NCBI RefSeq assembly: GCF_963921235.1
Contig: NC_086102.1
Location: 152,768,001 to 152,832,000, forward strand
Direction of reading: 5' to 3'
Source of the DNA: Mobula hypostoma
Taxonomy: Eukaryota
Length of the DNA: 64,000 nucleotides
Part shown: piece by piece, positions 28,601-63,500 of the stretch
Position numbering within the stretch: position 1 is the stretch's first letter
How the letters are laid out: every line of letters begins with the position of its first letter
The notes under the pieces: model-generated
Seen by the model: only the letters and a program-made list of their open reading frames with translations
The model's database searches: none
What the model was told of the DNA's origin: nothing
Made by a program: the position numbers and the translations under genes

Positions 28601-31600
28601 GAAGAGAGACCGACCCCAATGATCCTCTCAGCCGTCCTTGCAATCCTTTTCAAGAGGATTGGGGCCAGATGCCTTTCAATTCTGTTATCAGCTGGTCAGT
28701 TCTTCTTTGGTACAAAATCTAGTATTTAAATATTCATAATCCAATACATATTGGTGGATAATGACCAGAACTGGGACCATTTTTTTCACTCTGGTCATCA
28801 CTTTTTATTTGATCCTTTGAAGCCAGCTGAATGAACCAGTGGGAAAGTGAGCAATTATATATGACAAGCAACACACATCAAAGTTGCTGGTGAACGCAGC
28901 AGACCAGGCAGCATCTCTAGGAAGAGGTAAAGTCGACGTTTCGGGCCGAGACCCTTCGTCAGGACTAACTGAAGGAAGAGCTAGTAAGAGATTTGAAAGT
29001 GGGAGGGGGAGGGGGAGATTTTTGGCCTCACTGTGCCTTACTAAGAAAGAGGTTTATGGTGTGCATCACAGCTTCACAGCTTCCATTAATCATACATCAG
29101 GACTTCCTTATTTGTGTTACATTAAAAATAGATCTGAGAAAGTTTGTGGCATTATACAGTAAATACTAGTTAAATATTTCACATAAAATGGAAAAGTTTA
29201 AAGTTTTCACTCCTGACACAAAAAAAAGCTCTAGTTTTTCCACCCACGTCTATATAGACAGAATCGGGAAGCATTTTAATTGAGGGTCAATACAACCTAA
29301 ATTGCTTGATTTCACACTTGATAATCATAGTATATGAATATCAGCAAGGACCAGTGAATAGCAATTGGGACTGAGATGACATTTCTCAACCTCTGCTCTA
29401 ACAAGAAACCTTATAGTTCGACATGTTAGATCAGTTAAGTGAGCATAAAGCACAATTTGAACCTGGAATAGGCCAAGATTTCTTGCAGCTTTGCAGTCAA
29501 GGTTTAAGTCAAGTTTATGATTATATTCATGGGTACATGTAAGCACAGAAGCAATTAAAAACTTACTTGCAACAGCATCACAGGCACGTAGCATCATATA
29601 AGAACTTGTCACAAGAAAAATATAAATTACACACAAACTTTTTCAAGAACAAAAAAAAGTCCATTTTGGAGCAACTTGTCAAAATGGCCATAGTGTTGTT
29701 AAACTGTAGAGATTAGAGTTGTCCCAGTTAATTCAACAATCAAAAGGTTGAAGGGAAGTAACTGTCCTAGAATCTGGTGGTCTGGGATTTCAGGCTTCTG
29801 CCTGATGGTAGCTGGGGAATGACAGGTATCTTTGATGATAGATGTTGCCTTCCATTGGTGGGGATGGATGTAACTGTATTGTCTTAAGCAGAATCCACTA
29901 CTCTCTGCAGCTTCTTATGTTACTGCACATTTGAACTGCTGTAGCAGAACATGACAGACAACCAGTCAGGATACATTCAACAGTACATCTGCAGAATTTC
30001 TTGTGTTTATCATCCAATATGTTAATGCTCAAGAATTTAAAGCTGCTGATCTCTCTGCAATGGAATTCCTAATGAATTCTGGAATGTTTGTCCTCCTTCC
30101 CCTTCCTAAAGTCAACAATCAGCTCTTTACTTTCACTGAAGTTCAGCGAGAGATTGTTTTTGCAATACCACTCAACCAGATGACCTGTCTTACTCTGGCA
30201 ATCTGACTCATCTCCTTTAGTGGTTATCCAGCAGCAGAAGCACCACGAGTGCATTTGAACATGTGTGTACACAGAATACAAGGAGTTAAGCACACAGCCC
30301 TGAGGTGCACCTATTTTAATGGTTAGTGAGGAGATATTGTTACTAATCTGCAATGATTGAAGTCTTTAGACAGGGAAACTGAGTATCCAGTTGTAGGGGG
30401 AGGTACAGAGGCTAGTCTTGAAGCTTGATAATGACCTTCGATGGGATGATTGTGTTGAACACTGAGCTGTTGCCGATGAATGCCTGTATGAACACCTGGT
30501 GTCCTGGTGAACCAGAGCAGAGTAAAAAATCAGAAAAATAGCATCTGCTGCTGACATGTTATGGCTGTAGGAAAACTGGATTCAGATGGAGTTGATCTGT
30601 GCTATAACCATATGCCTTTTTGAACCAGATTGGAACCTCAGACCACAGAAGAGATAGATTGAATATGTCTGCAAATACCCCAGTCAGTTTGCCAACACAG
30701 ATGTTTAGCACTTAGCCACATACACCATCTAGACCAGACTTCTTTCATGGATTTACCCTCTTGAAGAAAGCTCATATGTCATTCTCAGAGACTGAAATTA
30801 CAGGGTCATCTAAAGATGTGGGGGCTGGTATGAGTGTGCCTTATGTCACCCTGTTAAAATGTGCATAAAAGGCATTGAGCTCACGCTATCCAATCTCATC
30901 TTGTAGGAAGATGTATCATACAAGCCCTCCCACAGCTGTTGAACATCCATCTATGATTCCAGTTTAATCCAAAAGTGCCTTTTTGCACTCTGAAAGTAGT
31001 ACTGGGATTTCTTATAAAACTTTCTCGAGTCACAAGACCTACGTACTACAGATTTAGCCATTAGCAGATTACAGATCTTCTGGTTCATCCAGGGCTTCTG
31101 ATTGAGGAAGACTCGGAATGTTTTTGTGGGTGCACATTTATCCACACATATCCATATAAAGTCAGTGACAACTATGGCATATTCATTTAAGTCCACTGAT
31201 GAATTCTTGAACATATTCCGCTCATTGACTCAAAGCAATCCTGCATTTACTCATTTGCTTCTGCTGTCCAGTTCTTTGTGGTCCTTCGCACTGATGCCAT
31301 GCTTCTCAGTTTCTGTCTGTATGCAGACAAGAGAAGCACAGTGGGTGAGAGATGGAGTGGTCAGCATTGTTGATGGTGGTATAGCAGTGGTCAAGTGTAT
31401 TGAGTCCTCTAGTATTGCAAGTGATGTACTGATAGTTGTTAGGCAAAGACTTCTTCAAGACTTATTAACCATGATGTGACAGGCTATGTTGCTTTGTCTT
31501 GTTAATCACAGCAATTAGTTCCTCAAGTGCAAGCTTGATGTCTACCTGAGGTGAAACGTAGACTGCAGTTAGGATGATGAAGAAGAGTTCCCAAGTAAGG

Positions 31601-39517: not shown

Positions 39518-40589
39518 CTTCTTTTTTCACATTATTTTGCTCTGCTCATATCTTTGTTGCTTTCAACAGATGTAATGAGTTCCTAAAGAATCCTTCATCA
39601 ATTTAGCAGCATCCTTGCCCACCCCATTCAACATTTACCTTTCTACCCAAGGTTTCTCAAAGTAAGCTCAAAATTCTTGAGATTCTCACCTATGTCCATC
39701 CCCTCATAGACTTTCTAAAGTCATTTTTTATCAGCACTATACCTGGCATGATACTATCTTAATTCTCTACACACTCAATTGCTGTCCTTCCTAGCCCTCA
39801 TACCAGCTGGTATTATAAATAGTTCCCTCTCCCTTTGTACTTTAGATAGTATAATTGAAACTGATAGTGTTCTGACTATTAGCGTCAATAAGGATAGAAG
39901 AGTTCTTCTAAGGTAAGTAATATTACTGAATTTGGCACAATTTTGTTGTGAATGATAGTGTAAACTTAAGTTAATGGAGCAATGCCGAGGTTTGTTAGTT
40001 GGAATTACTCTCAGGAGAATTGATAAGATTAGTAAAACTGGAAACTGTCAAAGATTTTGGTAAAGTTGAAGATTGAAAGAGAAATGTTTTAGAAGTAGTG
40101 AGTTGGTTCTGATGTTGCTAGATATGAAACTGAAACTGTGACTAAGATTGGTAAAGTTAGAATATTGTTGGCTTGTTTGAATAAACCAAGGTTAGTATAA
40201 TGCCACTCTGATGTAACCAGAGAGATTGGTAGATATACTGAAATATTCTATCGCCAGGAGTAACTGTCACTTAATTTGGTAGACTGTTAACTGAGCTTGA
40301 CGGACTTGTAAGGCGGCCTTTATGATTGGGAAGCTGTAAATAAAATTAGTAGTTTATACTATAAGATCGTCAATGAAAATACTATAGTTAAACTTGTGAG
40401 GTTGCCCCCGACGATGATCGACAGTCACTGAAGTCAGACGATTGTCACTGAGGAAAAGGCGTAGAGCTGTCTTTGAGTCAGGCAGAGTAAGCCGGCCAAA
40501 GATGAATGAGTAGTTACACCCGTGAAAAACCGAGGCTGATAGTAGCCGCTAATTTTAGTAAAATGCTCAGGATTTGGCTGTAGATCCTC

Positions 40590-41045
40590 CAGCTTGCAGC
40601 AATGTAGGAGCCAACACGGTTGCGGAGACCCACAGCGTTGTCAGCCGGACAACTCACACCTCTCCTCCTGCCCGTTACCAACGAGCGCCGTCTCCTTGAC
40701 AACAGAGCTGGCCGACCATGAGCCCCTGCGCACCCAGCCACTACTTCCTCTTCCGGTTTCTGTCACTTCCCCACGACCACCGCCGAGCAGCCAATGGAAG
40801 GTAAAGCGGTGTGGGGAGGTGGTCTCAGTCCCCCAGCCATATCATCCCCCTCCACTCAACAAACGGCTCTTAGTCGACGCCTTCTTCTTGGCTGGGCTGC
40901 TTTCTGCCTTTGCAAGTTCTTTTGCAGCCCGTATCTTATCCCAAACTGGGCTGCATTCACTTCATGGTTGTGACACGAGTTCAGTTCCCACCAGAGCAAC
41001 GGGCGAACTCGCATTAAGTCTTAAGGAAAAAAAGCTTCGCTGAGC
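40590..41045. promoter_or_regulatory. CpG-rich bidirectional promoter region; likely non-coding exon 1 of ANKAR
   Basis: Local GC/CpG enrichment between divergent genes. ETS-type CTTCCGG at 40750-40756, CCAAT at 40791, X-box-like GTCTCCTTGACAAC at 40690-40703, minus-strand donor gtgagt near 40657. Confidence 0.7.
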
Positions 41046-41736
41046 AGCAATGATCATAATTAAAATTTATCCAAAACACTAATGTATTATGTCTAACTCT
41101 GGTAATCTATGACCCCACTAGTATCATTGGCTCTTCCAAAGAAATCTAGAAAGCTACTCCTTCCAATGGTAATTATTGAAGAGGAACTGTCAGCCAAATT
41201 GGTGAAACAGATATCCCGCGAATCTCTATGCGCAGGGATTCTTGACATATATACCTCTTTCCAGACACAAGAGATTGTGTAGATGCTGGAAATCTTAAGC
41301 AATACACACAATGTTGGAGGAACTTAGCAGGTCAGGCCAGGCCTCATCTCTGGAGGGAAATGAACAGTCGATGTTTCGGGCTGAGACCTTTCATTTCAGC
41401 TCAAAAGGTCGGCTGATCATTTTCTTCTATAGATGTTGCCTGACCTGCGGAGCTCATTCAGCATTTTATGTGTGTTGCTACACTTCTTCCCACCTATGGT
41501 TTTCGAATGTCACCCGAAGCAGGACTATTTCCGCGTAGTGTACTAACAGTGGCGAGATGTCGGGAGGATTTAAGAAGTCGGTTTTTGCATTTTATAAGTG
41601 AGATAAATCGGAAAAGCCTTTATAGAATAAACGTCTTCGAACCTTTCTGAAAAGTAACAACATTGCTTAAAATATTGGTGACATCGCATAATCGCTGTGC
41701 TTTAATTTCTCCAGTAGGATAAATTGCACGGATACT

Positions 41737-41928
41737 ATGAAGGCTATTATTCTAGCTGCTGGCTATGGCACAAGATTCAATCGTGATCTACAGAACGATA
41801 ATAGTGGAGATTTCAAGCATCTCCATGGCATCCCTAAGCCCCTTTTACCAGTAGGCGATCAACCACTCATCAGTCATTGGATGACGACGATAAATAAAAT
41901 CAAGTCCATCGACGCAGTTTATGTTATT
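41737..41928 (+). CDS. Nucleotidyltransferase coding exon 1
   Basis: ATG...VYVI|gtacgt; glycine-rich nucleotide-binding loop LAAGYGTR. Confidence 0.93.
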
Positions 41929-44900
41929 GTACGTCTACATACTGATTTTTTTTCTGAAGAAAAACTATCTTTTCGGACTAGAAGAGTTTGGCTAAAATAA
42001 TGACCTGACTACCTAAGGCATAATTTCAACATTTGCAGATGACACAAAACTTGGAAATATGGTAAAAATCAAGGAACATAATAAAAAGCATGATATGGAT
42101 GTCAAAACTGTTGATATTGGAAGATAGATTGTTTATGGCAGAAACTGAACGCATTGTTACAAACAGAAAAGGCAATAAAAATGAAATGTACAATTCTGGA
42201 AGGTGTAGCAACATGAAGCCTGTGGGCATAGAAAGCCTTCAAAGGTAGTAAAATGTCGAAAAAACCACTATAATTAAGATGAATAGAATACAAAGTAAGG
42301 TTTATACAAAATAGGCCTCACCTTAATAAAGTTCCATCTTGGATGCCAGACTTAAAAATATCAAGGAAGGGTGGAAAAATGAGATTTATCTCCTTTAAGC
42401 AAAGAAAGTTAAGGAGAGTTTGAAAAACTAGAACAAAACTGGTTATAAATAGCAGATTTGGGAGTTACAGATAGAAGATAACTAAAATAACTAGAGGTGA
42501 CAACATATATATGCTCTGAATTATTGGCATTTCAGAAAGGGGTTGGAAGCAAATTCAATAACTTCCCACAGAGAAGTGGTGGATAACTGAAACAGAGAGA
42601 AAAAAAAACAGTTCTGAAGTGAAAGAAAATAACTCAAAAAGTTTCTCTTTTTTGGTCTGCAGAAAACATTTGTTGCAAAATTAAATGTATTTTCAATGTT
42701 TACATTTATAATCTGGGTCAGTTAGAACTTTCTTCTGATTTTTTATAACCTATTGAATAAGTAAAAATATTATCCTTGCAACTTGTCACTGGTTGCCAAT
42801 GATCTTTGCAGACCAATGATGTCTATTATGCAAAATTTGAAGATTGGGCAAAGGAGTTCCAACTAGTCACAGTCCTAAGTGATGGAACAACAAGCAATGA
42901 GGTGGGTATTCTCTGCTGTATCCAGGATTTTCAATCAATGATTTGAAATTGATGACTTTCAAAAATACTGCATCACTATGGAAATTACAATTTGGATACA
43001 GATAAGCTTCAATTCCAATGTAAAAGTGAAAAATACTTGTTCAGAAAATAGCTATTTATGATGGGGATAAAATTACTTTATTCATGAATGGTAAATGCAA
43101 TTATTCATTTGTTTCCTTTTTTTACTATTAGTATTCAGGTAATGCTTAGAGAGAACATTAGAAGGTTGTAACAGATCTACGTGTATAGATTAGGTTATAA
43201 TCAAGAATGATAATCAGCTAATTTATTGATGTCTTTGATCTGTTTCTAAATGCTAGAACTTCCTGCCAGTATCTACATACATTCTAAGTTATAATTTAGC
43301 TCCTTGTGCATGCTCCACCATTCAATAAGATCAGATTGCCTTTATACTTCATTGCCACTTTTCAGTGCTAACCAATTCTGCTCAATATCTAAGACTATAT
43401 TAACTTCCATCTTAAGCGTAAAATGATAAAAACTTTAGTGTACAGAAAGAAATTTTTCTGGGCCCTCCGAAGATTATATATTGAGACAGGATCCTGTTTC
43501 TAGATACTCAAACCAGGGAAGTATAGTTACAAACTTATATTAACCATATTTCTTGATTGGAGACTATAATTGCAATGAAACCTGACACAAATCTTGGGTT
43601 CATACCATTATGCATAGTGACCATCTGTAAATTTTAAATACAGCAGGTATTTTACAAATCTTAATTATCCAAGGGACCTCTTTGCAAAGTGCCAAGGAAA
43701 GAAACATAAGGGTGTCCCCACATTTACAAGATTTTTGTTTATGAAGTATTATTGTGATTAAAATGTTATATGATGTGTAAATTTTATAATTTATAATTTT
43801 TTGGAAAAATTTTCTTGCCTGTTTAAAATCAGCTTGTTCTCTTTATAGAAACGTTTAGGTGCAGTTGCTTGTCTTCAGCTTGTCATTACTCAGTTTAACA
43901 TCAATGATCATATATTGGTTCTTGGCGGGTAAGCAATAATAAAGAGCACAGTAAGGGTTTTAATATAAAATAATGATTTAAAATATGCAATATTTAACCT
44001 CAATTTTAATTTTAATTAACCATGTAAGCTTTTTACAGAATATATTGATATTTAACATCAATTAGTCTATAGCTGCTATTATTCTATGGTATTTGCTTAT
44101 AACAGTATTACTCACTGATAAACAATTCAAAGAACAAAATAAGTTAGTCAACAAAATGTAATTTGTTTTGTATTTCTTCACAATTTAACCTTTAACATAT
44201 CTGTCTGGTCTTTAAATAAGACTGTCTCTTATATTTCTGAACTGTAGAAAGCACAGACAGAGTTTTCTTTACCTGTGCAAATATTACTTAAAGACTGACA
44301 TTCATTGCTATCATAATCTATCTACCATTCATTTTCCTTTGTTAGTTCTATTTTCATTTGGAGTCTCTAGGGACCTGGAACCAATTTAGGCCATGGTTAG
44401 GCCATGAACCTGGTCCAAGTCACAACATGGGCTTCAAAATTTAACTTGAGCTGAAATTTATGCAAGGAGGAGAAGAGTAAAATCTTGCAATAGTTAAATT
44501 TGGAGATGACAAAATGGTTTCAATCAATTTAACCTTTAACTTTTTAAATGAATTGTTCCAGCTTTCACTTTGACTACTTTTCTTTTATATCAGGGACACA
44601 TTGTTCTATGAGGACTTCAGTCTTTCGGATATCCTTGCAAAATTTGCTGAGCTGCAGAATATTAACTGTGAAAGCAGTTTGGTTTTGTCATACCCATGCA
44701 AAGATGAAGGTCAATTCAAAAATTTATTACAAAGATTATTTCTTTCCTGAACCAATCTTTGAGAAAACTAACATAATTTCTCTCCACAGAAACCACAAAA
44801 TTTGGCATCTTGGAAATAAATGAAAAGTTGCAAGTCACTGGATTTAAAGAAAAACCCAGCTCTACCGAAACAACATCTCGCAATGCAGTAAGATTTTTGA

Positions 44901-46036
44901 TTTCTAACATGACATTTCTGTCCTGACGAAGGGTCTCGGCCTGAAACGTCGACTGCGCCTCTTCCTATAGATGCTGCTTGGCCTGCTGCGTTCACCAGCA
45001 ACTTTGATGTATGTTGCTTGAATTTCCAGCATCTGCAGAATTCCTGCTGTTTGCGTTTAAATTTCTTGGTCACATCATTTTTCTTTTAAAAGCTTCTTTT
45101 GGAAAATGTTACTTCAAAAGCATCACTTCCTGCTAATGCTGTCTTGTGGAACCAAGTTTATATTCTCATCTTTGAATTCTTTAAGTTTAAAAATTAGATT
45201 CAAAACTAGTCTAGTTGAATATTGATAAGAGTTTTTTATTCACATCAATTTTCTATTTTCCAGTGCCCATGCTTTTACATATATTCAAAAAATACAGTTC
45301 CATTGATTGCAAAATTTCTTCAAGAGAAACAAGTAAGTGTCAACATCAATAAGATTAAGTTCAATCTATTCTTTTTAAAAAGTATGTTTAAGTCATGTTG
45401 TAACTAGAGAAATGTTCAGCATTATTATACCACTTAATTATTAGTACATTTAAGCATTTTAGTGCAAATCCAATTCTACGTTACCTGTGTAGATTTAGTA
45501 ACATATTAACAGTTAGTAACATATTTGAACAGTATTTATATTTTAAATTACCACAACATGGTTCAAATATTCAATGTGTTTTTAAAGACAATTAATTACT
45601 ATTATTTTGATGGGAAGACTATATTGAAATTATTTGCTTGAATCAAATATGTTGGCAGCTATACCTAATCAAATGGCCCAAAAGTTCCCAAGAATATATT
45701 TTCCTTTCAATCAATTTATAATTCCTTGGAAAAATATAAGGATTATTTATTTCAGTAATTTATACAAAACACTTCTTTTAAATTATTTATTTTCATTAGA
45801 ATTCACCATTGGAAGAGAGAGATGCGCCTGGAAATTTTTTGCTTTGGGTCTACACAAGGTAATAATGTTTATTTTCAAATTAATTTAAAATATTTATGCC
45901 ATTTTGCTACTTCTGCTTTTTATATTGCAGGAAACCAGTGTTTGTCCATCATGTATGTGGCCGATTTGATGTTGGAAATCTTCCATCATACATTGCATGT
46001 ACTAAGTATTTCCAGAAGTCTTGTGGTGCAATCTGA
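41737..46036 (+). CDS. Uncharacterised sugar-1-phosphate nucleotidyltransferase (NTP_transferase family, RmlA/GalU/GMPP-like catalytic domain only), 269 aa, 8 coding exons; resembles zebrafish zgc:136439 from memory
   Basis: Exons 41737-41928, 42812-42901, 43849-43928, 44594-44709, 44790-44887, 45264-45332, 45800-45858, 45931-46036 total 810 nt, all GT-AG and in phase. Motifs MKAIILAAGYGTR, PKPLLPVG, GGDTLF, FGILE, FKEKP, RFDVG. Confidence 0.93.
42812..42901 (+). CDS. Nucleotidyltransferase coding exon 2
   Basis: ttgcag|TNDVYYAKFEDWAKEFQLVTVLSDGTTSNE|gtgggt. Confidence 0.9.
43849..43928 (+). CDS. Nucleotidyltransferase coding exon 3
   Basis: ttatag|KRLGAVACLQLVITQFNINDHILVLGG|gtaagc. Confidence 0.9.
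44594..44709 (+). CDS. Nucleotidyltransferase coding exon 4
   Basis: tatcag|DTLFYEDFSL...SYPCKDE|gtcaat. Confidence 0.88.
44790..44887 (+). CDS. Nucleotidyltransferase coding exon 5
   Basis: ccacag|ETTKFGILEINEKLQVTGFKEKPSSTETTSRNA|gtaaga. Confidence 0.9.
44920..45056 (+). mobile_element. Penelope-derived mini-element beginning with a hammerhead core (44920-44953)
   Basis: GTC CTGACGA AGGGTCTCGGCCT GAAAC GTC GAC followed by pLTR end and tail. Confidence 0.85.
45264..45332 (+). CDS. Nucleotidyltransferase coding exon 6
   Basis: ttccag|CPCFYIYSKNTVPLIAKFLQEKQ|gtaagt. Confidence 0.9.
45800..45858 (+). CDS. Nucleotidyltransferase coding exon 7
   Basis: cattag|NSPLEERDAPGNFLLWVYT|gtaata. Confidence 0.9.
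45931..46036 (+). CDS. Nucleotidyltransferase coding exon 8 (terminal)
   Basis: ttgcag|RKPVFVHHVCGRFDVGNLPSYIACTKYFQKSCGAI*. Candidate AATAAA signals at 46637, 46826, 46940 and 47154. Confidence 0.9.
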
Positions 46037-47810
46037 TTGTAAAGTTATTATTCATTCCGATTAAGTTCTTCTTAAACTTGTGACCATTTCTTTTGTTAGT
46101 GTTAATAGAGAACATGGTCTGGCACCAAACATTTAATGAAGCCTAGCAATTACGTGTTCTGAATTATTGTTTAAACTAAATGTAGCACTGAACAACTACA
46201 AACCAGAAATACACTTTTGTAGACTTCTCACCTTAGTTAAATTTAAAGGAATGCATTTCTTCCTCAGTTGAACAGTGATAGAATGTCAGAAGAATGATGA
46301 AACATCCTCAGCTTTTAAAAATTTTCCATAAAATTTCTCAAGTGTTTATATAATTTTTACTCTTTTTGAATGGCGCGATGAAAATGTATTTGTAAATTAT
46401 AAACTTTAAGGCAATTGTTTTGGAGAACATGAGGTGAGAAAGGAACTTTTACTGATCTTGCAATCAAGTATAGGGCTCATGTTGGAAGAGTTAATCTATT
46501 CCAGTCCTACAAAAGCCAAAGTGTCTTCCTCTGAGATGTACTTTCTATTATGCACAAGATTATAAAAATTGAAATTATTATTTTAATTGTTATGTTACTT
46601 TGGAACAGATTTCATACTGACATTAGAAGTGAACTTAATAAAATGAAATTCAGAATATTGTTTAGGTAGAGTTGACTGGAAGACTTATAGAACTGAGGCA
46701 TATTGATAGAATTTCAAACAACCTTTTATATCAGACAAATAATAAGATTTATATTTATACCTTGCTGGCAGTGAACTGTATATCGTTAAAGTAACCATAC
46801 ATGACTATCACCAGTATTTTGTTTTAATAAAATAATATACATTTTATAACTACAAAGAGAGATTTATATTTTGCAGGGATGCTTAATGTATTTAGGACAA
46901 CTTAGAGGTGCCAAATTTCATGTAATTTTTTTTGTATCAAATAAACTGGTAGCACAACATTCATGCTGTCTGCTCTCTTATCCTTTAGTATCCATTTGAA
47001 ATTGATGGGAAACAAAGTGATGCAAATGATCTTGAAAATGATCATTTAATATTTTTAATTTCCACAAGACCATAATTATTGAAATATTTTGATTATTTTT
47101 ATAAACAGTAATACATTAATTAGTTAGCAATTCCTACCTGCAGCTCTTTTGCTAATAAAGTACTATTGACACAATATTTTTTTAAACTACTGACTATAAA
47201 GCCCCAATTACTGAAAATGCTTTTATTATATCTGAGTCAGCACCCTTCTCAGATATTCTACCTTATTCAAAAATCACAACAGAAAATATTTCATAGTACA
47301 TTATTTCCATTTTCTTTTGATGGATTAAGAATTTGAAAGATAGAGGTTACAATATTGTGTCCTTAAGATCATCTTCTGAGCAGATTCATAGAATCACTAC
47401 TATTAAATTTTAAATGCACTGGCTCATATTTTGAGGAAACTGCTGAGTGACATCACTTACCACAGAACTTAGGGGAGAAAAACGGTAGAGATGTAGCAGT
47501 CTCTGAGACAAGAATTTCCTGTATGTGATGCCCCCTGCTAGCAATTTTATTGAACTTCAAGGCCAGGCAGCTGGTGATATTGAGCTGGCTGGGTAATCAT
47601 TTTCACTAGATCTCATGGACAGGAGATCAGAAAGAAAATTTCAGGTATGTCTAAACAGAAACATACACTCAATTAAAGCAGAAGATAAAATAAATGTTTT
47701 ATTTTAAATTTGTATATGAAACATTTCAGAAAATTAACACTACACAAAAGAAAATCTATTTTTAGGATTCAATAATTTGCGAAACTATTGAGGATATCAA
47801 AAGTTTCTTT

Positions 47811-55103: not shown

Positions 55104-58100
55104 CTGAAGTGATACAAATACAAGAATTATTTTTAGTACTTTTATTCCAATGGCAAATAGAATTTCCTGGTAATTTTGTAACTTGTACGCAAACAACAGG
55201 AATTCTGCAGATGCTGGAAATTCAAGCAACACACATCAAAGTTGCTGGTGAACGCAGCAGGCCAGGCAGCATCTGTAGGAAGAGGTGCAGTCGACGTTTC
55301 AGGCCGAGACCCTTCGTCAGGACTAACTGAAGGAAGAGTGAGTAAGGGATTTGAAAGTTGGAGGGGGAGGGAGAGATCCAAATTGATAGGAGAAGACAGG
55401 AAGGGGAGGGATGGAGCCAAGAGCTAGACAGGTGATAGGCAAAAGGGGATACGAGAGGATCATGGGACAGGAGGTCCGGGAAGAAAGACGGGGGGGGGGG
55501 GACCCAGAGGATGGGCAAGAGGTATATTCAGAGGGACAGAGGGAGAAAAAGGAGAGTAGAGAAAGAATGTGTGCATAAAAATAAATAACGGACGGGGTAC
55601 GAGGGGGAGGTGGGGCCTTAGCGGAAGTTAGAGAAGTCGATGTTCATGCCATCAGGTTGGAGGCTACCCAGACGGAATATAAGGTGTTGTTCCTCCAACC
55701 TGAGTGTGGCTTCATCTTTACAGTAGAGGAGGCCGTGGATAGGCATGTCAGAATGGGAATGGGATGTGGAATTAAAATGTGTGGCCACTGGGAGATCCTG
55801 CTTTCTTTGGCGGACAGAGCGTAGATGTTCAGCAAAGCGGTCTCCCAGTCTGCGTCGGGTCTCGCCAATATATAAAAGGCCACATCGGGAGCACCGGACG
55901 CAGTATATCACCCCAGTCGACTCACAGGTGAAGTGTTGCCTCACCTGGAAGGACTGTTTGGGGCCCTGAATGGTGGTAAGGGAGGAAGTGTAAGGGCATG
56001 TGTAGCACTTGTTCCGCTTACACGGATGTGTCAGGAGGGAGACCTGACGTAATCCCTTACTCACTCTTCCTTCAGTTAGTCCTGACGAAGGGTCTCGGCC
56101 TGAAACGTCGACTGCACCTCTTCCTACAGATGCTGCCTGGCCTGCTGCGTTCACCAGCAACTTTGATGTGTGTTGCTTTGTAACTTGTACGTTTTTTTTC
56201 TCCTTGCTTACTTGGACCAGTGTTAATTTGGACATATCTCTAGCCCCAAAGGCCTATCATTATTCAACGGGCAATGCCGGTTGAATTCCTGACTATGGCA
56301 GTTCCATCCAGCTTTCTTTCTTAATACTGTTGAATTCAGCAGTCTGATCTTATGCCTATCCACTCATATCAATGCTACTTATTATGCTATCAAGTATTGT
56401 TTACTTCATTATGTAAGGTTAAGTTGTATTCATTTAATCCAAGTATGAAAGCTGTGAAAAATTTGAGAACCAGATTGATAGGGAGAATTAAAGTTGCCTT
56501 TCACTGACATAACTAGGCCCAATGGAAGCCTGCGGAACAGCACCCATTTCTGACGACAGCATATCCCTTCTGAAAGACCTGAACTGCATGTTTTGAAGAG
56601 GATTGGTATGTCACCATCCACTCTGACAACCTCCTATTTTACCTTGCGCTACCTTGATACACTGAGTAAGGAATTGCTCTGCATTAACAGTACGCAAGAC
56701 ATTTTCACTCTTCCTTAGTACACGTGACAATAATAAACCAATTCCAATGTAACCTTCCAGACTCAATAATGAATTTTCCATCTTCAAGTAATTAATTTAA
56801 GATTTCCAGCACCTGCAGTTTTTTTTTAAAAATTTTCAGGCAACTCACTTATTCTCTCCTTCATCAGAACTGGTCATGTCTTCTGTAATGTATGTAAGAT
56901 ATTAGCTCAGTTTTTCTTTCTCCTATAGCAAAATTTTACTTTAATGCATATCCCACACCCCTGCAAGACATTAAAGTTACTTTGTTTGTAATATCACTCT
57001 CCATCTGTCCTCTTTAACCATTTGACCAGAGGACAGCACATATTTCCCCTTGACAACCCTGTCTTCATTCATGGATACTCACTTGCTCTTGTGCATCTTC
57101 TCCTCACCTTATCTGAAGCTCAAAACTAAATATTTTTCTTTTTCCCAGTCTTATGAATCAACCTGAACAGTATCACGATTTTTGCAAGCGGAACAAGTGC
57201 TTCACCTGCCCCTACACCTCCTCTCTCACTACCATTCAGTGCCCCAGACAGTCCTTCCAGGAGAGGCCACACCTCACCTGTGAGTCTGTTGGGGTTATAT
57301 ACTGTGTCCAGTGCTCCCAGTGTGGCAACTCATATACTGGTGAAGCACGACATAGACTGGGAGGCTACTTCGCCGAGCATTTACACTCCATCCGTCAGAA
57401 CAAGCAGGATCTCCCAGTGGCCACCCATTTTAATTCCACTTCCCATTCCCATTCTGGTATGTCCATCCATGGCCTACTCCACTGTCAGGATAAGGCCACA
57501 CTTCGGTTGGAGGAACAACATCTTGTATTCCATCTGGGTAGCCTCCAGCCTCATGGCATGAACATCAATTTCTCAAACTTCCAGTAATGTCTCCAGCACC
57601 CCCATCACTTCACCATTTCCCATCACCTTGCTTCTTTCCCGTGGTCACCAATGACTCTGTCGTCTCTTCCAAGATTACGTGAGGAGATGCGATCAAGTTC
57701 CATCTCCAGTTCTTTGACCAGGCCTTCAAATCCTGATGTTTTGTAGCGGATGCGGTGACGGGAGTAACCTGCAAGTTGTTCATCAGCGCCAATCCCAGTC
57801 AACACCACCTAGAAGCAAATATTTATACAGCTTTTCATTCCCAAGCCTGCTAACACCAGTTAAATGAAAACGCAATGTACTACCCAAAACCAATTTTGGT
57901 TAATACAGCTTAAGTTAACAAAGTATTACATTTCAAACAGAAGTTAATTCTAACATAACTGGGTTAACATTAACACAAGGAAATCTGCAGATGCTGGAAA
58001 TTCAAGCAACACACATAAAAGTTGCTGGTGAATGCAGCAGGCCAGGCAGCATCTCTAGGAAGAGGTACAGTCGACGTTTCGGGCTGAGACCCTTCGTCAG

Positions 58101-60501
58101 GACATTGGGTAAACATTAATCTGATTAATGTTTACAGCATTTTCTGTTTTTAGTTCATATTTTTATCATTTACAATAATTTGTGGTCTGTGTTACGGGCA
58201 AAGATCAATGTGACTCCGTACTTGGAGGCATTTGGAAAATAAATAGAATGCAGAAGTTGGTTAAAAATTCATAAGATAGAAAGTAAAGGTACTTCAAAAC
58301 AAGCAGCATTTGCTTTAAGGATACGTGGGTATACAATAAGAGATGGAAGCAAAAATATCACAATAAGGATAACTACAACTTAAGAGAAAAGATCACTGAC
58401 TAATGAATGCAGGGATAAGAAATCAGAAGAGATTAGGTCAGCAGCAACATAGGACTTAGTAGTAGATCAACTCAACCTTACAGGATGTAAAGTTTTTAAA
58501 GGTCCAAAGGTAACCTTACACCAGGAAATGTGGTTTTTGAAAAACAATGGGAAATCTGCAGAAGACAACAATATGTGTTCTAAGCGCAAAAGTACTCAAC
58601 CAATTTATTCCAATTCTATTTCTACGTCAGGCCACAGTTGAGGTTAGAATTATTTTAAAGTGAGGGTACTTGAATGTGCTTTTCAGGGAAGTTACAACAC
58701 CCAGGTCAAGCCTTATTCTCATTGCTACCCTCAGGAAGGAGGTAAGAGAGGCGCAAGGACACACTCGGTAATTCAAGAACAGCTTCTTCCCTTCTGCCAT
58801 CCGATTTCTGAATGGACATTGAAACCATGAACACGACTTCAAAACTTACTTATTTATATGATTTGCACTACTCATTTAACTATTTTATACACACACATAT
58901 ATATATGTATATATGCAGTAATATTAATCCTGACTCTGCCATTCTATTTAAATGCAGTTAAGTAATAAACAACAATGACTTCTTCATTAAAATATGCATC
59001 TGATCAATGTTTATACTCCAAATAGTGTGTGCAAAAATAAAACTTTAAGAATTTAACTCCTCACCTTAGCAGTGCTGATATACTGCTGGATGTCTTCATT
59101 GCTGGTGTTAATACCAATACCTCTTGCTGCAAACCATACCGCACAGCCAATGCTGTCATCCAAAACAGTGTCCAGGGGTTGTACCAAATGGCTAATCCGG
59201 TGTTGTCTCATTTCTTTCAGCTCTTCTAATGTGATATTGATTTCTACAAAATTCCAATGTCTGGAAGGATTTATAATTTGTAATTCTTTTAAACCAGCCT
59301 GGCCAGTGATCCGATCAGGCACATTAAAAGCAGTTTTCTCCTTAATAGTAACACTGTCATTTTTTGAAGTCTCCATTTCTGATGCATCAGCAGTATTGTT
59401 TTGTCGCTGCTTTTTCTTTGAGATTTTTTGCATTTTCCTTTCTCGCTGCTCAAAGGCTACATTCAGTAAGTCAATAGGTTCATCTGCAGGAACATGTCGG
59501 TCAGCCAAGGCAGAGAGGACCATAGAATCAACACCTCCAGAAAAAAGAATTGCTACTTTTGCTTTATCAGAATTCATTTTATGCACTGCACAATCAGATG
59601 GATTTAGGTTCCTTGGTAAAAAAAGCACTCGTCGTCTAACAGATTCATTCAAAATATCAATAAATTGATGAACAATTTTTTTCTTGTGTTCATCTGAAAG
59701 ACACATGTCAACATTTGTCAAATTTCTTGCAGAATAATTACTTTCTGTACATGGATCTGGAATACTGCAATTCATAGGAATGATGGGGGCTCTGAGGAAA
59801 ATCCTTGATTCATTCAAAAGCACAGAAACAAAATTAGGAAGTTCTTCACTGAACTGAGCTTGTAAGTGAGAAGCCATTTCACATTCAGTCGAAACATGTT
59901 TCCAAGGGTACCACGTTAGTGCCAGACAGCTGGGATTGGGCTGTTTTTGTAGGTCAATTTTATAAAGTCCACGTGCTGGTACCTCATACCAAGGGACATT
60001 TAGACAGTTTGGGAGAGAAGCACTCACTGATACAAGAGTAAGGTAGGGATTTTTAAACTGCCATAGTAAACTCCGGCGACCAAAATAGTCTCGACCAAAC
60101 CACAAACAATGAGTGGATGGTTGGTAATAGATAAAAGCCCAAGGTCCTCGAATAGCTGAAAAGACAGATAGAATGTCTTCTTCACTGTAACATGAAGACA
60201 AATGCTGAAGAATAATCTGAGTGTCATTGTCTTCAGGTTTCATTTCAATACCCCCAAACACCTCCCCATTCCAAAGGAGGAGATTTCCTTGAGCATCCTG
60301 CATGGGCTGTGGATTTAGGCTTCCTCTCATATGCAGCACATGACCAGAAAAGCTACAACTATAGCCCAGATCAGGCACCACTTTGGATAACTGTTGACTA
60401 TAGTTAGGACCTCTTCGTCGAAGGCATTCAAGCATTTCCTCTCCCAAAATAACAGGAGCATTTTGGGGGGACAAAACTAACATACAGCAAATTCCACACA
60501 T
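54848..60501 (-). CDS. ASNSD1: Asparagine synthetase domain-containing protein 1, 624 aa, 3 coding exons
   Basis: Exons 60501-59065, 57808-57627 and 55103-54848 total 1875 nt in frame. N-terminal Ntn-amidotransferase [23 protein letters not shown]; synthetase motifs [42 protein letters not shown]. Confidence 0.97.
55289..55324 (-). ncRNA. Minimal hammerhead ribozyme motif (sense to ASNSD1 pre-mRNA)
   Basis: Same core. Confidence 0.75.
56078..56113 (+). ncRNA. Minimal hammerhead ribozyme motif
   Basis: Same core. Confidence 0.75.
57180..57622 (+). mobile_element. Older Penelope GIY-YIG fragment
   Basis: CKRNKCFTC...[19 protein letters not shown]...MNINFSNFQ*. Confidence 0.9.
57627..57808 (-). 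CDS. ASNSD1: ASNSD1 second coding exon (182 nt)
   Basis: ttctag|[15 protein letters not shown]...HGKEA AG|gtgatg. Confidence 0.95.
57974..58105 (-). mobile_element. Penelope-derived ~130-bp mini-element with hammerhead core (58070-58103)
   Basis: 14-bp TSD with one mismatch, TGGGT(T/A)AACATTAA, at 57960-57973 and 58106-58119. Confidence 0.85.
58720..58885 (+). mobile_element. Rex1-like 3' fragment (a related copy lies at ~63580-63805)
   Basis: ttcaagaacagcttcttcccttctgccatccgatttctgaa ([14 protein letters not shown]). Confidence 0.65.
59065..60501 (-). CDS. ASNSD1: ASNSD1 first coding exon (shared with 3' end of ASDURF; exon starts at 60616)
   Basis: 479 codons; donor AAG|gtgagg. Confidence 0.96.
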
Positions 60502-60551: not shown

Positions 60552-63500
60552 TTACTTCTTCACTTCCTCAGTATTTTCCAATTCCTGGTATTCCCTTCTC
60601 ATCTCATCAAGGGAACCTGTAAAATTACATACCAATAATTAGATTCTTTGAGAGTCCTTTGTATTAAATTTGCTATGAAAGTGAAGGCTGCTGTGTTTTG
60701 CTTTGCCAGAGAAGGTTCAAAGTAGTACCAAATTGATTTGAACTTCCTCATGCTTTAAGAATACCCAATTTTAAAAAAACTTTTGAAGATAGAGACTGCC
60801 ATCTTATTAACTTTATGATTAATAGGCAAAACATGCATTATTTTCTCCTCATAGGTAAAAGAATTGAATAATGGATAGAATAATAAATATATTTAGTAAC
60901 CAATCATAATATTATTAATATCTTCATAATTGTTAATTAATTAATTGGGAGAAAATAATTCTCTTGCCAAATATTTTAGTAGTGTTTGTTCCAGATTGGG
61001 ATATTTAATCACATTCAAGCTTTTAAAGTCCAATAAGTTCTAAAAGTATAACTATAACAGTTAAATTTTCTGTTAAAATGTCCAATTTGACACACATCAT
61101 GTTTCAGAACCATCTGACACAAAAAGTACCACTGAGTAACAAGTTGGTGAATTTTACAAGCACTGTCAATGGCTATTTGTTTCTGACAGATGGAAGAAGA
61201 AGAAGGATATTATTAAATGACCTCATTCCACCCATGTAGATAAAATACTACTCATGAAGGTAAACAACAGGAATTCTGCAGATGCTGGAAATTCAAGCAA
61301 CACACATAAAAGTTGCTGGTGAACGCAGCAGGCCAGGCAGCATCTGTAGGAAGAGGTGCAGTCGACGTTTCAGGCCGAGACCCTTCGTCAGGACTAACTG
61401 AAGGAAGAGTGAGTAAGGGATTTGAAAGCTGGAGGGGGAGGGGGAGATGCAAAATGATAGGAGAAGACAGGAGGGGGAGGGATGGAGCCGAGAGCTGGAC
61501 AGGTGATAGGCAGAAGGGGATACGAGAGGATCATGGGACAGGAGGTCCGGGAAGAAAGACGGGGGGGGGGTGACCCAGAGGATGGGCAAGAGGTATATTC
61601 AGAGGCTCTACTGTAAAGATGAAGCCACACTCAGGTTGGAGGAACAACACCTTATATTCCGTATGGGTAGCCTCCAACCTGATGGCATGAACATTGACTT
61701 CTCTAACTTCCGCTAGGCCCCACCTCCCCCTCGTACCCCATCTGTTACTCTTTTTTATGCACACATTCTTTCTCTCACTCTCCTTTTTCTCCCTCTGTCC
61801 CTCTGAATATACCTCTTGCCCATCCTCTGGGTCACCCCCCCCCGTCTTTCTTCCCGGACCTCCTGTCCCATGATCCTCTCGTATCCCCTTCTGCCTATCA
61901 CCTGTCCAGCTCTCGGCTCCATCCCTCCCCCTCCTGTCTTCTCCTATCATTTTGCATCTCCCCCTCCCCCTCCAGCTTTCAAATCCCTTACTCACTCTTC
62001 CTTCAGTTAGTCCTGACGAAGGGTCTCGGCCTGAAACGTCGACTGCACCTCTTCCTACAGATGCTGCCTGGCCTGCTGCGTTCACCAGCAACTTTTATGT
62101 GTGTTGCTACTCATGAAGGTGACCAGTATGAACACGAGTTAATAGACAAAGCAAAGGGAACATGTTTTGAAAATCAGTAAGGAAATTAAAAATAGAAGGA
62201 TTAAGTGTCTAATACAGAAATAATACAATAGAGCTTCTTATGAATATAGAAAACAAAAACGTTGAATCTGATAACTTACACAACAGATTCACCAACCATA
62301 TTTTACAAAATATTCTTTCAAAATAAATAACTTACATTTACTTTCACTTAGAGTCTGTGTTTGATCTGCTGTAAAAAATATATAGCTATTCGGCTGCTGC
62401 TTATAAACTTTCTGAAATAGAATGGTTAACAATTATTGTAAAAAGGAGAAACAATTAATGTATTAAAAAAGCAAAGCATTTGGCTCTATGCATGCATTTG
62501 GTTCATTAAAGTGTTTTTATTAAATTTTATTCCCTTCATTTTCACCAAATCATATTTTGAACTACTTTCCAACTTTAAATAAAATAAAGGAAATTTGGTT
62601 TATTGTGAAATTATTCTACACTATTTCTGAAGGAAATTCCATTAGCTGCATGCACAGTGCTAATACATTTACCATTACAAATGGATATTCAATAACCTTG
62701 GAGTGTTTTTCCAATATGCAATTTATTAGAATATAACCCTGCAGGCAGCAAAACTCTGGGCTGATAAGTGGCAAGAATCAGTTGAACAACACAAGTATAT
62801 TGCAACAATCATCTCTAGTAATCCAATTTAATCATGTACTTGCAATCAAAGCATCAGATTAAGAAACTCTCAGAAGCCATCACTGAGCACAATGCAAATT
62901 GTGATAACAAGACTAGGTCCTATGCTGGGAAAGTAACCAACTTCCTGACTCCCTGAGTTTGTTCCACAATCCAGAAAGATCATGTAGCCAAACACTATTC
63001 AGCACTAACTCACATGACGAGCACATCATATATCACCCTAAGACTTTAGCTTGTAGTGGGCAAGGTGTTGATTCTGGTGATGAGAAATTTGGAAAATGTA
63101 AAGAGCAAGGCAAAGTTATAGCACAAGGTACCAAAAAAAAAACCAGGTAATATTAACCAGAGCTCGTCAGTGTAGGACAGTACACTGCATGTGTTTATCT
63201 TCACTTGAGTCACAGTAAAGAAAAAAGGCAAAAATAGTAGTATTTGCAGCTAATTGCACATCATATTTATAAATCCACAGGCAGATTAACAACACAGAAA
63301 TAAATGTGTATAATTTTATAGGCAGCATTCCAAAGGTGTGCCTGTAAAGTGACCATGGTTGGGAACTGAAGTTTACAGGATGCGTGACCTCTAGAAGAAA
63401 TAGGCCAAGATGACAAAAGGTAAGGTGGCCCTTACAGTACAAAGTTAAAAGCTTAGTATTGAAAATTTGTGAAATAGAATCAATTTAGATGGATGTAAGA

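What the first reader, a model, noticed from the sequence alone, without database searches (positions are those of the whole stretch)
41737..46036. Intact orphan sugar-nucleotidyltransferase gene between ANKAR and ASNSD1
Seen: a clean 8-exon, 269-aa ORF that the ORF track only catches in fragments. It has the full NTP_transferase motif set (LAAGYGTR, PKPLLP, GGD, FGI, EKP, DVG) and no C-terminal beta-helix, so it is not GMPPA/GMPPB. Known: in human, ASNSD1 and ANKAR are neighbours on the same strand, and I recall no such gene between them. Inference: an ancestral vertebrate NDP-sugar pyrophosphorylase of unknown substrate, lost in mammals. It may be related to the pyrophosphorylase half of the fish glucuronokinase fusion protein and may define an undescribed sugar-salvage step.
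Basis: partly seen in the sequence, partly recalled or inferred. Interest (0 to 1): 0.75.

Follow-up and report, generated by a model that had tools for sequence, protein, structure and literature searches.

The report
Orphan sugar-nucleotide enzyme gene, mammal-lost
This is a real, expressed gene for a small enzyme that most likely attaches a nucleotide to a sugar phosphate; it sits between ANKAR and ASNSD1 in cartilaginous fish and frogs (beside ASNSD1 in a bony fish), was not found in amniotes, and may be the missing enzyme of an animal glucuronic-acid recycling pathway.

Summary
On the + strand at 41737-46036 there are 8 coding exons (269 aa, all GT-AG). RNA-derived contigs from two related organisms show all seven coding splice joints. 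They also show an unnoticed non-coding 5' exon ending at 40800 and a 3' UTR running to about 46955.

The protein is the elasmobranch orthologue of the annotated but uncharacterised fish gene zgc:136439. It is 81-85% identical to shark copies, 74% to Callorhinchus, 55-64% to amphibians and 57-60% to teleosts. The order ANKAR(-)/gene(+)/ASNSD1(-) is the same in Callorhinchus and Xenopus. In tilapia the gene is also next to ASNSD1. No amniote orthologue appeared.

The family is older than vertebrates (sponge, annelid, crustacean, tunicate, ichthyosporean).

New here: 203 of 212 standalone proteins keep the catalytic set R13, K34, D122, K181, D248. All animal GKUP N-domains examined have lost R13 and D248. 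That fits the near-zero activity measured for zebrafish and Xenopus GKUP in 2014.

The gene most likely encodes an active UDP-sugar pyrophosphorylase. The substrate is untested; UDP-glucuronate salvage is my favoured guess (about 0.3).

The scan holds a duplicate first-stage note of this finding on this same stretch (s1-142634); nothing was noted on other DNA.

The parts
40500..41000 (.). GC-rich island (GC 0.52-0.61 against about 0.35 around it). It lies between the 5' end of ANKAR (- strand) and the first exon of this gene (+ strand), so it is probably a shared bidirectional promoter.
   Evidence: composition profile; position of the 5' exon joint. That it acts as a promoter is inferred.
40766..40800 (+). 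Non-coding exon 1, minimum extent. The true start lies further upstream. The GT donor is at 40801.
   Evidence: X2 contig joint 40800->41715, GT..AG, with 35 nt on the 5' side; sequence.
41715..41928 (+). Exon 2: 22 nt of 5' UTR, ATG at 41737, codons 1-64. It holds the G-x-G-T-R loop (R13) and PKPLLP (K34).
42812..42901 (+). Coding exon, residues 65-94. It includes N93, which by register is equivalent to the base-contacting Gln83 of RmlA.
43849..43928 (+). Coding exon, residues 95-121 (last codon split). It carries RLGAV and the start of GGD.
44594..44709 (+). Coding exon, residues 121-159, including D122 of GGDTLF.
44790..44887 (+). Coding exon, residues 160-192: FGILE, EKP (K181) and the TTSR motif.
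45264..45332 (+). Coding exon, residues 193-215 (CPCFY).
45800..45858 (+). Coding exon, residues 216-235 (ERDAPG).
45931..46036 (+). Last coding stretch, residues 235-269 and TGA. It carries GRFDVG (R246, D248).
46037..46955 (+). 3' UTR, with AATAAA at 46940-46945.
   Evidence: The X1, X2 and X5 contigs continue unbroken from 45929 past 46599. The X2 contig extends about 356 nt further; sequence.

Best explanation
This is a functional, transcribed gene and the cartilaginous-fish orthologue of zebrafish zgc:136439. It encodes a 30-kDa single-domain sugar-1-phosphate nucleotidylyltransferase (NDP-sugar pyrophosphorylase) with the GalU/RmlA fold. Shown: the gene structure, splicing and expression; orthology; conserved position beside ASNSD1 (and ANKAR); the fold; and retention of every canonical catalytic residue. 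These are the G-x-G-T-R loop Arg, the PK(P/A)LLP Lys, the GGD Asp, the EKP Lys and the RFDVG Asp. Inferred mechanism: Mg2+-dependent attack of a sugar-1-phosphate on the alpha-phosphate of an NTP, releasing pyrophosphate and an NDP-sugar in the cytosol. The nucleotide is most likely UTP. Three lines point that way: a relative is fused in one reading frame to UDP-glucose 4-epimerase; the closest archaeal relatives sit beside UDP-glucose dehydrogenase; and the paralogous GKUP makes traces of UDP-GlcA. The sugar is not known. My favoured reading (about 0.3) is glucuronate-1-phosphate, with this enzyme supplying the pyrophosphorylase activity that the catalytically degenerate N-domain of animal GKUP lacks. 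A UDP-Glc/UDP-Gal or broad UDP-sugar salvage enzyme is about as likely. The gene was inherited from a pre-metazoan ancestor, and no amniote copy was found.
For: Gene model and splice joints. Between organism B and the window, coding differences are 5 in 810 nt (3 synonymous). The 3' UTR shows 13 in 563 nt. Pfam NTP_transferase scores 70 bits on orthologue P0059 against a cut-off of 21.2, and exons 1 and 5 of the window hit it individually. Orthology rests on three things. Identity is 81-85% to sharks, 74% to Callorhinchus and 55-64% to amphibians. The vertebrate clade has 98/97 support and the chondrichthyan clade 100/99. Eight exon breakpoints are shared with Callorhinchus, Xenopus and tilapia. 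Synteny. The AlphaFold model of the 85%-identical Heterodontus protein has pLDDT 96.5. Its best structural matches are GalU-type UDP-glucose pyrophosphorylases, RmlA, AGPase and GMPPA/B at TM about 0.7. Alignment with E. coli RfbA and GalU places R13, K34, D122, K181 and D248 on their catalytic residues. This pentad is intact in 203 of 212 standalone proteins but in only 11 of 112 N-terminally fused proteins of 540 aa or more, nearly all kinase-fused. For UDP: P0131 is a GALE domain (E 1e-131) joined to this domain in one uninterrupted ORF on a eukaryotic contig, and UGDH and epimerase genes flank the closest archaeal relatives. For the GKUP link: at least 15 named species carry both genes. 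In addition, 89% of 43 hallmark positions are kept in kinase-fused protist enzymes with an intact pentad. Gangl et al. 2014 found no standard-assay pyrophosphorylase activity for zebrafish or Xenopus GKUP and proposed a missing protein factor (PMC3938481).
Against: No enzyme assay exists for any member, so activity, nucleotide and sugar are all unproven. Structural neighbours are equally distant (17-23% identity) from UDP-, dTDP-, ADP- and GDP-forming enzymes. The residue at the base-contact position is Asn, not the Gln of RmlA, GalU and GlmU. One sea-star gene model fuses the domain to an L-galactose-dehydrogenase-like reductase, which points to other sugars. The Omnitrophota operon context (CofD, HPr, PtsI, MetK, AhcY, Pfk) says nothing about uronic acids. 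Co-occurrence with GKUP was seen only among named hits and was not tested statistically. The interaction test could not be run. Loss in amniotes rests on absence from capped protein searches, not on genome searches.
Confidence: 0.8

Rival explanations
1. It is a GalU-like UDP-glucose/UDP-galactose (or broad UDP-sugar) pyrophosphorylase that works on its own, has no functional tie to GKUP, and is redundant with UGP2. That redundancy would explain why amniotes could lose it.
For: The top structural matches are GalU-type enzymes. The C-terminal RFDVG motif resembles the HD-CG motif of GalU. A real single-ORF fusion with UDP-glucose 4-epimerase exists in a protist. UGDH is a neighbour in the closest archaeal relatives.
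Against: GalU and RmlA NCBIfam models score about 30 bits against cut-offs above 320. The family shares 89% of its hallmark positions with glucuronokinase-fused enzymes. Its phyletic pattern mirrors that of GKUP.
Confidence: 0.3
2. It activates a different sugar or uses a different nucleotide, for example GDP-, CDP-, ADP- or dTDP-linked sugars, or L-galactose, L-fucose or arabinose-type sugars.
For: The fold is equidistant from ADP-, GDP- and dTDP-forming enzymes. The base-contact position holds Asn rather than Gln, and solved RmlA Gln83 variants sit with other nucleotides (PDB titles 3PKP and 3PKQ). The sea-star model P0124 carries an L-galactose-dehydrogenase-like domain (E 1e-89).
Against: The P0124 fusion is a single predicted gene model. 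The GALE fusion, the UGDH neighbours and the GKUP product all point to UDP.
Confidence: 0.15
3. It is a non-catalytic regulatory or scaffolding subunit, like GMPPA or eIF2B-gamma.
For: Paralogous pairs of active and inactive subunits are common in this superfamily (GMPPA/GMPPB appears among the structural matches).
Against: Here the standalone protein is the one that keeps all five catalytic residues (203 of 212), and the GKUP domain is the one that lost them.
Confidence: 0.04
4. It is a pseudogene, or a chance ORF assembled from fragments.
For: None found.
Against: Seven exact GT-AG joints are seen in RNA-derived contigs of three runs from two organisms. The frame is open. Exon structure and synteny are conserved across jawed vertebrates. 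The coding sequence is more conserved than the UTR.
Confidence: 0.01

Closest known systems
zgc:136439 (zebrafish and teleost 'uncharacterized protein zgc:136439'; Xenopus XB5749127). NCBI's automatic names for the same protein vary: glucose-1-phosphate adenylyl-, thymidylyl- or uridylyltransferase-like, or mannose-1-phosphate guanyltransferase.
   Same: It is the orthologue. Length is 265-275 aa and identity 55-85%. Eight coding exons have the same breakpoints. The position next to ASNSD1 is the same, and the gene tree follows the species tree.
   Different: Nothing essential differs; this is the elasmobranch copy. No function has been published. The only mention found is a goldfish microarray line reading 'Novel protein (zgc:136439), no homolog' (PMC3487223).
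N-terminal 'UP' domain of GKUP, glucuronokinase with putative uridyl pyrophosphorylase (Gangl et al. 2014, PMC3938481)
   Same: The fold and length are the same (about 260 aa) and the family-specific motifs are shared (PKxLLP, DGT..N..RLGA, EKP..T.SR). The two are sister clades within one eukaryotic family (96/83 support for the union). The phyletic range is the same: fish, amphibians, many invertebrates, and no amniote seen.
   Different: The window protein has no GHMP kinase domain. Identity to animal GKUP is only 31-33%. Intron positions are not shared. Animal GKUP has lost R13 (to L, V, I, Q, K, H or S), N93, D223, R246 and D248 (to Q), while the standalone protein keeps them all.
Bacterial GalU (UTP-glucose-1-phosphate uridylyltransferase) and RmlA/RfbA (glucose-1-phosphate thymidylyltransferase)
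   Same: The fold matches at TM about 0.7. The catalytic Arg, Lys, Asp, Lys and Asp align. It has a single domain with no beta-helix tail.
   Different: Identity is 17-22%. NCBIfam scores are about 30 bits against cut-offs of 327-361. There is an 11-residue insertion between the G-x-G-T-R loop and the Lys. Asn stands at the Gln83 position.
GMPPA/GMPPB, the active plus inactive paralogue pair of GDP-mannose pyrophosphorylase
   Same: The catalytic domain fold is the same (7D72 among the structural hits). It offers a possible analogy for an intact enzyme paired with a degenerate paralogue.
   Different: There is no left-handed beta-helix C-terminal domain. No sequence match to 7D72 chains appears at E <= 0.01. 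No evidence of a complex was obtained.

Membership tests
Sugar-1-phosphate nucleotidylyltransferase superfamily (Pfam PF00483 NTP_transferase, GalU/RmlA fold) | Profile match above the curated threshold | tested here: met
   Orthologues P0059 and P0028 score 70 bits against a cut-off of 21.2. Window exon 1 alone scores 20.0 bits (and 27.6 for PF12804 against its cut-off of 27), and exon 5 alone scores 19.4.
Sugar-1-phosphate nucleotidylyltransferase superfamily (Pfam PF00483 NTP_transferase, GalU/RmlA fold) | N-terminal G-x-G-T-R loop followed by a conserved Lys | tested here: met
   AAGYGTR (R13) and PKPLLP (K34) align with GGSGTRL and SKQLLP of E. coli RfbA and with GLGTRM and PKEMLP of GalU.
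Sugar-1-phosphate nucleotidylyltransferase superfamily (Pfam PF00483 NTP_transferase, GalU/RmlA fold) | Two metal-binding Asp residues and the EKP Lys | tested here: met
   D122 (GGDT), K181 (EKP) and D248 (RFDVG) align with LGDN, EEKP and WLD-TG of RfbA. That these are the catalytic residues comes from published RmlA and GalU work, recalled from memory.
Sugar-1-phosphate nucleotidylyltransferase superfamily (Pfam PF00483 NTP_transferase, GalU/RmlA fold) | Rossmann-like alpha/beta fold | tested here: met
   The AlphaFold2 model of Heterodontus P0443 (85% identical to the window protein) has pLDDT 96.5. Foldseek gives TM 0.67-0.76 to GalU, RmlA, AGPase and GMPPA/B.
Sugar-1-phosphate nucleotidylyltransferase superfamily (Pfam PF00483 NTP_transferase, GalU/RmlA fold) | NTP + sugar-1-P -> NDP-sugar + PPi activity | not testable with these tools
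   This needs recombinant enzyme.
zgc:136439 orthologue group | Groups with vertebrate members in a tree that follows the species phylogeny | tested here: met
   Vertebrate clade 98/97, chondrichthyan clade 100/99, window sister to Heterodontus 100/91.
zgc:136439 orthologue group | Conserved genomic position and exon structure | tested here: met
   The order ANKAR(-)/gene(+)/ASNSD1(-)/ASDURF is found in Callorhinchus and Xenopus tropicalis. In tilapia the gene(+) is followed by ASNSD1(-). Exon breakpoints are the same.
GKUP (glucuronokinase with putative uridyl pyrophosphorylase) | C-terminal GHMP sugar-kinase domain | tested here: not met
   The ORF stops at residue 269, and the RNA contig continues into the 3' UTR without another coding exon.
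GKUP (glucuronokinase with putative uridyl pyrophosphorylase) | N-domain falls inside the kinase-fused clade | tested here: not met
   The kinase-fused clade (99/96) excludes the window protein, which lies in the standalone clade (94/83).
GMPPA/GMPPB | C-terminal left-handed beta-helix domain | tested here: not met
   The protein is 269 aa and the model is a single domain. No sequence hit to 7D72 chains appears at E <= 0.01.
GalU (TIGR01099) and RmlA (TIGR01207) equivalogs | Score at or above the curated NCBIfam cut-off | tested here: not met
   30.6 against 326.8 for GalU, and 32.6 against 360.65 for RmlA, on orthologue P0059. No NCBIfam model reaches its cut-off for five diverse members.

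The most novel reading that the evidence does not exclude
The 'pyrophosphorylase' domain of animal GKUP is a pseudoenzyme. It has lost its NTP-loop Arg, its base-contact residue and a metal-binding Asp. The standalone zgc:136439-type protein encoded here would then be the real UDP-glucuronate pyrophosphorylase of the animal myo-inositol/glucuronate salvage route. It might work as a GMPPA/GMPPB-like heteromer with the degenerate GKUP domain. Both genes would have been discarded together in amniotes.
Probability: 0.3. Interest if true: 0.7.

Novelty: new member of a known kind. Interest (0 to 1): 0.5.

Why it matters
Animals are textbook-described as making UDP-glucuronic acid, the donor for glycosaminoglycans and glucuronidation, only by oxidising UDP-glucose. 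A 2014 study found a glucuronokinase in fish and frogs that implies a second, salvage route. However, the attached 'pyrophosphorylase' domain was almost dead in every assay, so the pathway was left without its second enzyme. This analysis gives a concrete reason: the attached domain lacks two canonical catalytic residues in all animal sequences examined here. It also gives a concrete candidate: a conserved, catalytically intact paralogue found in the same animal groups, and in at least 15 of the same named species. One recombinant enzyme assay would settle the question. Independently of that, the gene is a clean example of an ancient metabolic gene removed from a conserved interval (ANKAR-ASNSD1) in the amniote lineage. 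It also shows that the mixed automatic names given to this protein in databases (ADP-, dTDP-, UDP-glucose or GDP-mannose enzyme) have no support.

Tried and rejected
1. Complex prediction of Xenopus GKUP residues 1-262 with the Xenopus standalone protein was NOT FOLDED under a tool rule. There is no verdict either way.

2. Intron positions were compared between the standalone gene and Xenopus GKUP. At most one of about 8 coincides. This neither helps nor hurts, and it is consistent with a very old split.

3. A PDB sequence search gave only weak RmlA and GalU hits (E 3e-4 to 8e-3), so no close solved relative exists.

4. NCBIfam gave no model at its cut-off.

5. AlphaFold DB Swiss-Prot gave no reviewed member of the family.

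6. The Omnitrophota/Planctomycetes operon context is conserved (CofD-HPr-PtsI-gene-MetK-AhcY-Pfk) but uninformative about substrate.

7. Rfam found no match at gathering score in 40-48 kb, and no hammerhead even at E <= 1 in intron 5.

8. Literature searches for ASNSD1/ANKAR plus nucleotidyltransferase, for zgc:136439 and for a UDP-GlcA pyrophosphorylase follow-up found no characterisation.

9. The spliced 269-aa window protein could not be submitted whole to the database tools, because it has no single reference. Exon 1, exon pieces and the closest orthologues were used instead.

10. Two encoding-contig look-ups failed for lack of a free slot and were repeated successfully (then 45, 46).


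Full report
**1. The observation**

Reading 41500-46300 on the + strand and joining the candidate exons gives a clean model. The exons are 41737-41928, 42812-42901, 43849-43928, 44594-44709, 44790-44887, 45264-45332, 45800-45858 and 45931-46036. This gives 810 nt, 269 codons and a TGA stop. All seven introns begin GT and end AG.

**2. Expression**

A search of public runs found 14 holders. Several hold 0.24-0.41 of the sampled words, roughly the exonic share of the stretch. I laid four of them on 40600-46599.

- Runs X1 and X2 (organism A) and X5 (organism B, a close relative with scattered differences) each carry contigs that skip exactly the seven predicted introns.
- One X2 contig of 1788 nt covers the whole transcript.
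- That contig adds a joint from 40800 to 41715 (GT..AG). So there is a non-coding first exon in the GC-rich island at 40.5-41.0 kb, and the exon with the ATG begins 22 nt upstream of it.
- The contig also runs about 356 nt past 46599. It ends just after AATAAA at 46940.
- The runs' RNA status is a guess in their records. However, intron-less contigs with GT-AG borders are what spliced RNA gives.
- Organism B differs from the window at 5 of 810 coding positions (3 synonymous). It differs at 13 of 563 positions in the 3' UTR. This is a modest sign of purifying selection.

**3. What the protein is**

- Exon 1 alone hits NTP_transf_3 and NTP_transferase, and exon 5 hits NTP_transferase.
- Exon 1 searched against 1.84 billion representative proteins gave 300 hits, many about 265-275 aa long.
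- The spliced model aligns end to end with them.
- A homologue search with the best full-length hit returned 2752 proteins. The best 120 are all teleost, many labelled 'uncharacterized protein zgc:136439'. Others carry contradictory automatic names, such as ADP-, dTDP- or UDP-glucose or GDP-mannose enzymes.
- An amphibian query listed salamanders, caecilians and many frogs. It also listed five chondrichthyans: Stegostoma, Hemiscyllium, Heterodontus, Cetorhinus and Callorhinchus.
- The window protein is 81-85% identical to the shark proteins, 74% to Callorhinchus, 55-64% to amphibians and 57-60% to teleosts.
- No reptile, bird or mammal appears in either list. An amniote orthologue should have ranked with the sharks in the amphibian search.
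- Outside vertebrates the standalone protein occurs in Capitella, Sycon, Oikopleura, a crayfish and the ichthyosporean Chromosphaera.

**4. Synteny and gene structure**

- In Callorhinchus the order is ANKAR(-), this gene(+), ASNSD1(-), ASDURF.
- Xenopus tropicalis has the same order.
- In tilapia the gene is followed tail-to-tail by ASNSD1 and ASDURF, with CNOT9 upstream.
- In the window, the minus-strand ORFs at 34.6-39.0 kb match the first ANKAR exons of Callorhinchus and Xenopus. The ORF at 59053-60501 is ASNSD1.
- The eight coding blocks break at the same residues in Callorhinchus, Xenopus and tilapia.
- That human ANKAR and ASNSD1 are adjacent with nothing between them is from memory and was not tested here.

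**5. Relation to known enzymes**

- By sequence, the PDB offers only weak RmlA and GalU matches (E 3e-4 and worse).
- No NCBIfam model comes near its cut-off.
- An AlphaFold2 model of the Heterodontus orthologue is very confident (pLDDT 96.5).
- It superposes on GalU-type UDP-glucose pyrophosphorylases, RmlA, ADP-glucose pyrophosphorylase and GMPPA/GMPPB at TM about 0.7 and 17-22% identity.
- Reviewed UniProt models give the same picture, with no reviewed member of the family.
- The protein therefore has the canonical fold but forms its own uncharacterised subfamily.
- Aligning it with E. coli RfbA and GalU puts R13, K34, D122, K181 and D248 on their G-x-G-T-R Arg, conserved Lys, GDN/PDV Asp, EKP Lys and WLD/HD Asp.
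- N93 lies, by register (five residues before the conserved Gly), at the Gln83 position of RmlA. That residue contacts the base (recalled knowledge). Solved Gln83 variants carry other nucleotides (titles of 3PKP and 3PKQ).

**6. The GKUP connection**

One exon-1 hit, P0147, is a protist protein with this domain fused to a GHMP kinase. Searching with it brought in GKUP proteins of fish, sharks, frogs and many invertebrates.

- The window protein is 31-33% identical to animal GKUP N-domains and 41% to the protist fusions.
- I built a tree of 67 sequences with IQ-TREE (LG+C20, rooted on E. coli GalU and RfbA).
- Prokaryotic relatives are basal, and one eukaryotic clade has 99/98 support.
- Inside that clade, a kinase-fused clade (99/96) is sister to a standalone clade (94/83) that holds the window protein.
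- The two are therefore ancient paralogues.
- Intron positions are not shared between them.

**7. The main new point**

In the alignments, animal GKUP reads AGHGT-L-L where the standalone family reads AGYGT-R-L. It reads TGF-Q-LIG where the standalone family reads GRF-D-VG.

- Across 333 domain sequences, the pentad R-K-D-K-D is intact in 203 of 212 standalone proteins. The rest are mostly gaps.
- It is intact in only 11 of 112 N-terminally fused proteins of 540 aa or more. Ten of these are kinase-fused; the eleventh is the sea-star fusion P0124.
- Every animal GKUP examined has L, V, I, Q, K, H or S at the Arg position and Q at the second Asp position. A basal protist group of fusions keeps all five residues.
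- There are 43 positions conserved at 85% or more in a non-redundant standalone set. The intact protist fusions keep 89% of them, and the degenerate fusions keep 66%.
- The losses cluster in the NTP loop (Y10-R13), N93, D223, R246 and D248. The EKP and sugar-side motifs persist.
- This matches the biochemistry of Gangl et al. 2014. The zebrafish and Xenopus domains gave no activity in standard assays, whatever the buffer, cation or nucleotide tried, and no activity in yeast. Only a trace of UDP-GlcA appeared after 70 h.
- Those authors raised the possibility of a missing protein cofactor, and stated that BLAST found no other homologue in zebrafish (PMC3938481).
- The standalone paralogue co-occurs with GKUP in at least 15 named species across my hit lists. 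Examples are Capitella, Cherax, Xenopus tropicalis, Spea, Discoglossus, Rana, Gymnothorax, Clupea and Gasterosteus.

**8. Clues to the substrate**

- P0131 is a bona fide UDP-glucose 4-epimerase (E 1e-131 to GALE structures) joined to this domain. It is one uninterrupted 612-codon ORF on a compact eukaryotic contig.
- The closest archaeal relatives (39-41% identity) lie beside UDP-glucose dehydrogenase and epimerase/dehydratase genes.
- Both clues favour a UDP-sugar product.
- A sea-star model fuses the domain to an L-galactose-dehydrogenase-like aldo-keto reductase. Another protein fuses it to DJ-1/PfpI. Neither is explained.
- The Omnitrophota operon (CofD, HPr, PtsI, gene, MetK, AhcY, Pfk) is conserved but not telling.

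**9. Verdict**

- The gene is already annotated elsewhere as zgc:136439.
- It predates animals.
- The loss looks amniote-wide, though it is shown only by absence from searches.

The protein is best read as a catalytically competent NDP-sugar, probably UDP-sugar, pyrophosphorylase. Its sugar is unknown. I give about 0.3 to the reading that it is the working UDP-glucuronate pyrophosphorylase that complements a degenerate GKUP domain. An interaction prediction could not be run. No publication characterising the protein was found.

Noticed in passing
window 44900-45060 (intron 5) and 41200-41480 (intron 1); similar ORF translations at 28884-29162, 55142-55420 and 61293-61589: Copies of a very abundant interspersed repeat. 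Summed RNA-contig depth reaches 1e5 and more, and many spurious 'joints' link the two copies. The element contains a CTGACGAAGGG...CCTGAAACGTCGAC core that looks hammerhead-like, but Rfam gives no hammerhead match even at E <= 1.
   Followed up: partly
window 43881: The window has T where contigs of all three RNA-type runs (X1, X2, X5) have C. The change is synonymous (Leu105), so it is a polymorphism or an assembly base.
   Followed up: partly
P0438 (Anomaloglossus baeobatrachus, 382 aa): A frog RefSeq model named after OSGEPL1 (tRNA threonylcarbamoyltransferase, isoform X7) carries this whole nucleotidyltransferase domain at residues 110-373. It is probably a read-through or mis-joined model. 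OSGEPL1 lies beside ANKAR in human (from memory).
   Followed up: no
L001 6001-6789 and L002 6001-6786 (Nanoarchaeota and Woesearchaeota MAGs): These DPANN archaeal copies are 39-41% identical to the animal protein. They branch inside the eukaryotic clade rather than with other prokaryotes. P0116 has the same domain sequence as the L002 protein (zero branch length). Either there was a eukaryote-to-archaeon transfer or the bins are contaminated.
   Followed up: partly
L003-L037 (Omnitrophota and 'Planctomycetales' MAGs), e.g. L027 2737-10299: A strictly conserved same-strand gene row: CofD/YvcK-like, HPr, PtsI, the nucleotidyltransferase, MetK, AhcY, phosphofructokinase.
   Followed up: partly
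L085 1895-3733: A single-ORF fusion of UDP-glucose 4-epimerase with this nucleotidyltransferase, in an unidentified compact-genome eukaryote. Its neighbours are Ras, SRP14, Beclin and HSP70.
   Followed up: partly
P0124 (Patiria miniata, 641 aa) and P0072/P0169: The domain is fused to an L-galactose-dehydrogenase-like aldo-keto reductase in a sea-star gene model. It is fused to a DJ-1/PfpI domain in metagenomic proteins. The meaning is unknown.
   Followed up: partly
window 6363-8636 and 15896-16447: Retroelement-like ORFs (a zinc-knuckle-like CX2C motif and reverse-transcriptase-like stretches, judged by eye from the translations) lie inside ANKAR introns.
   Followed up: no
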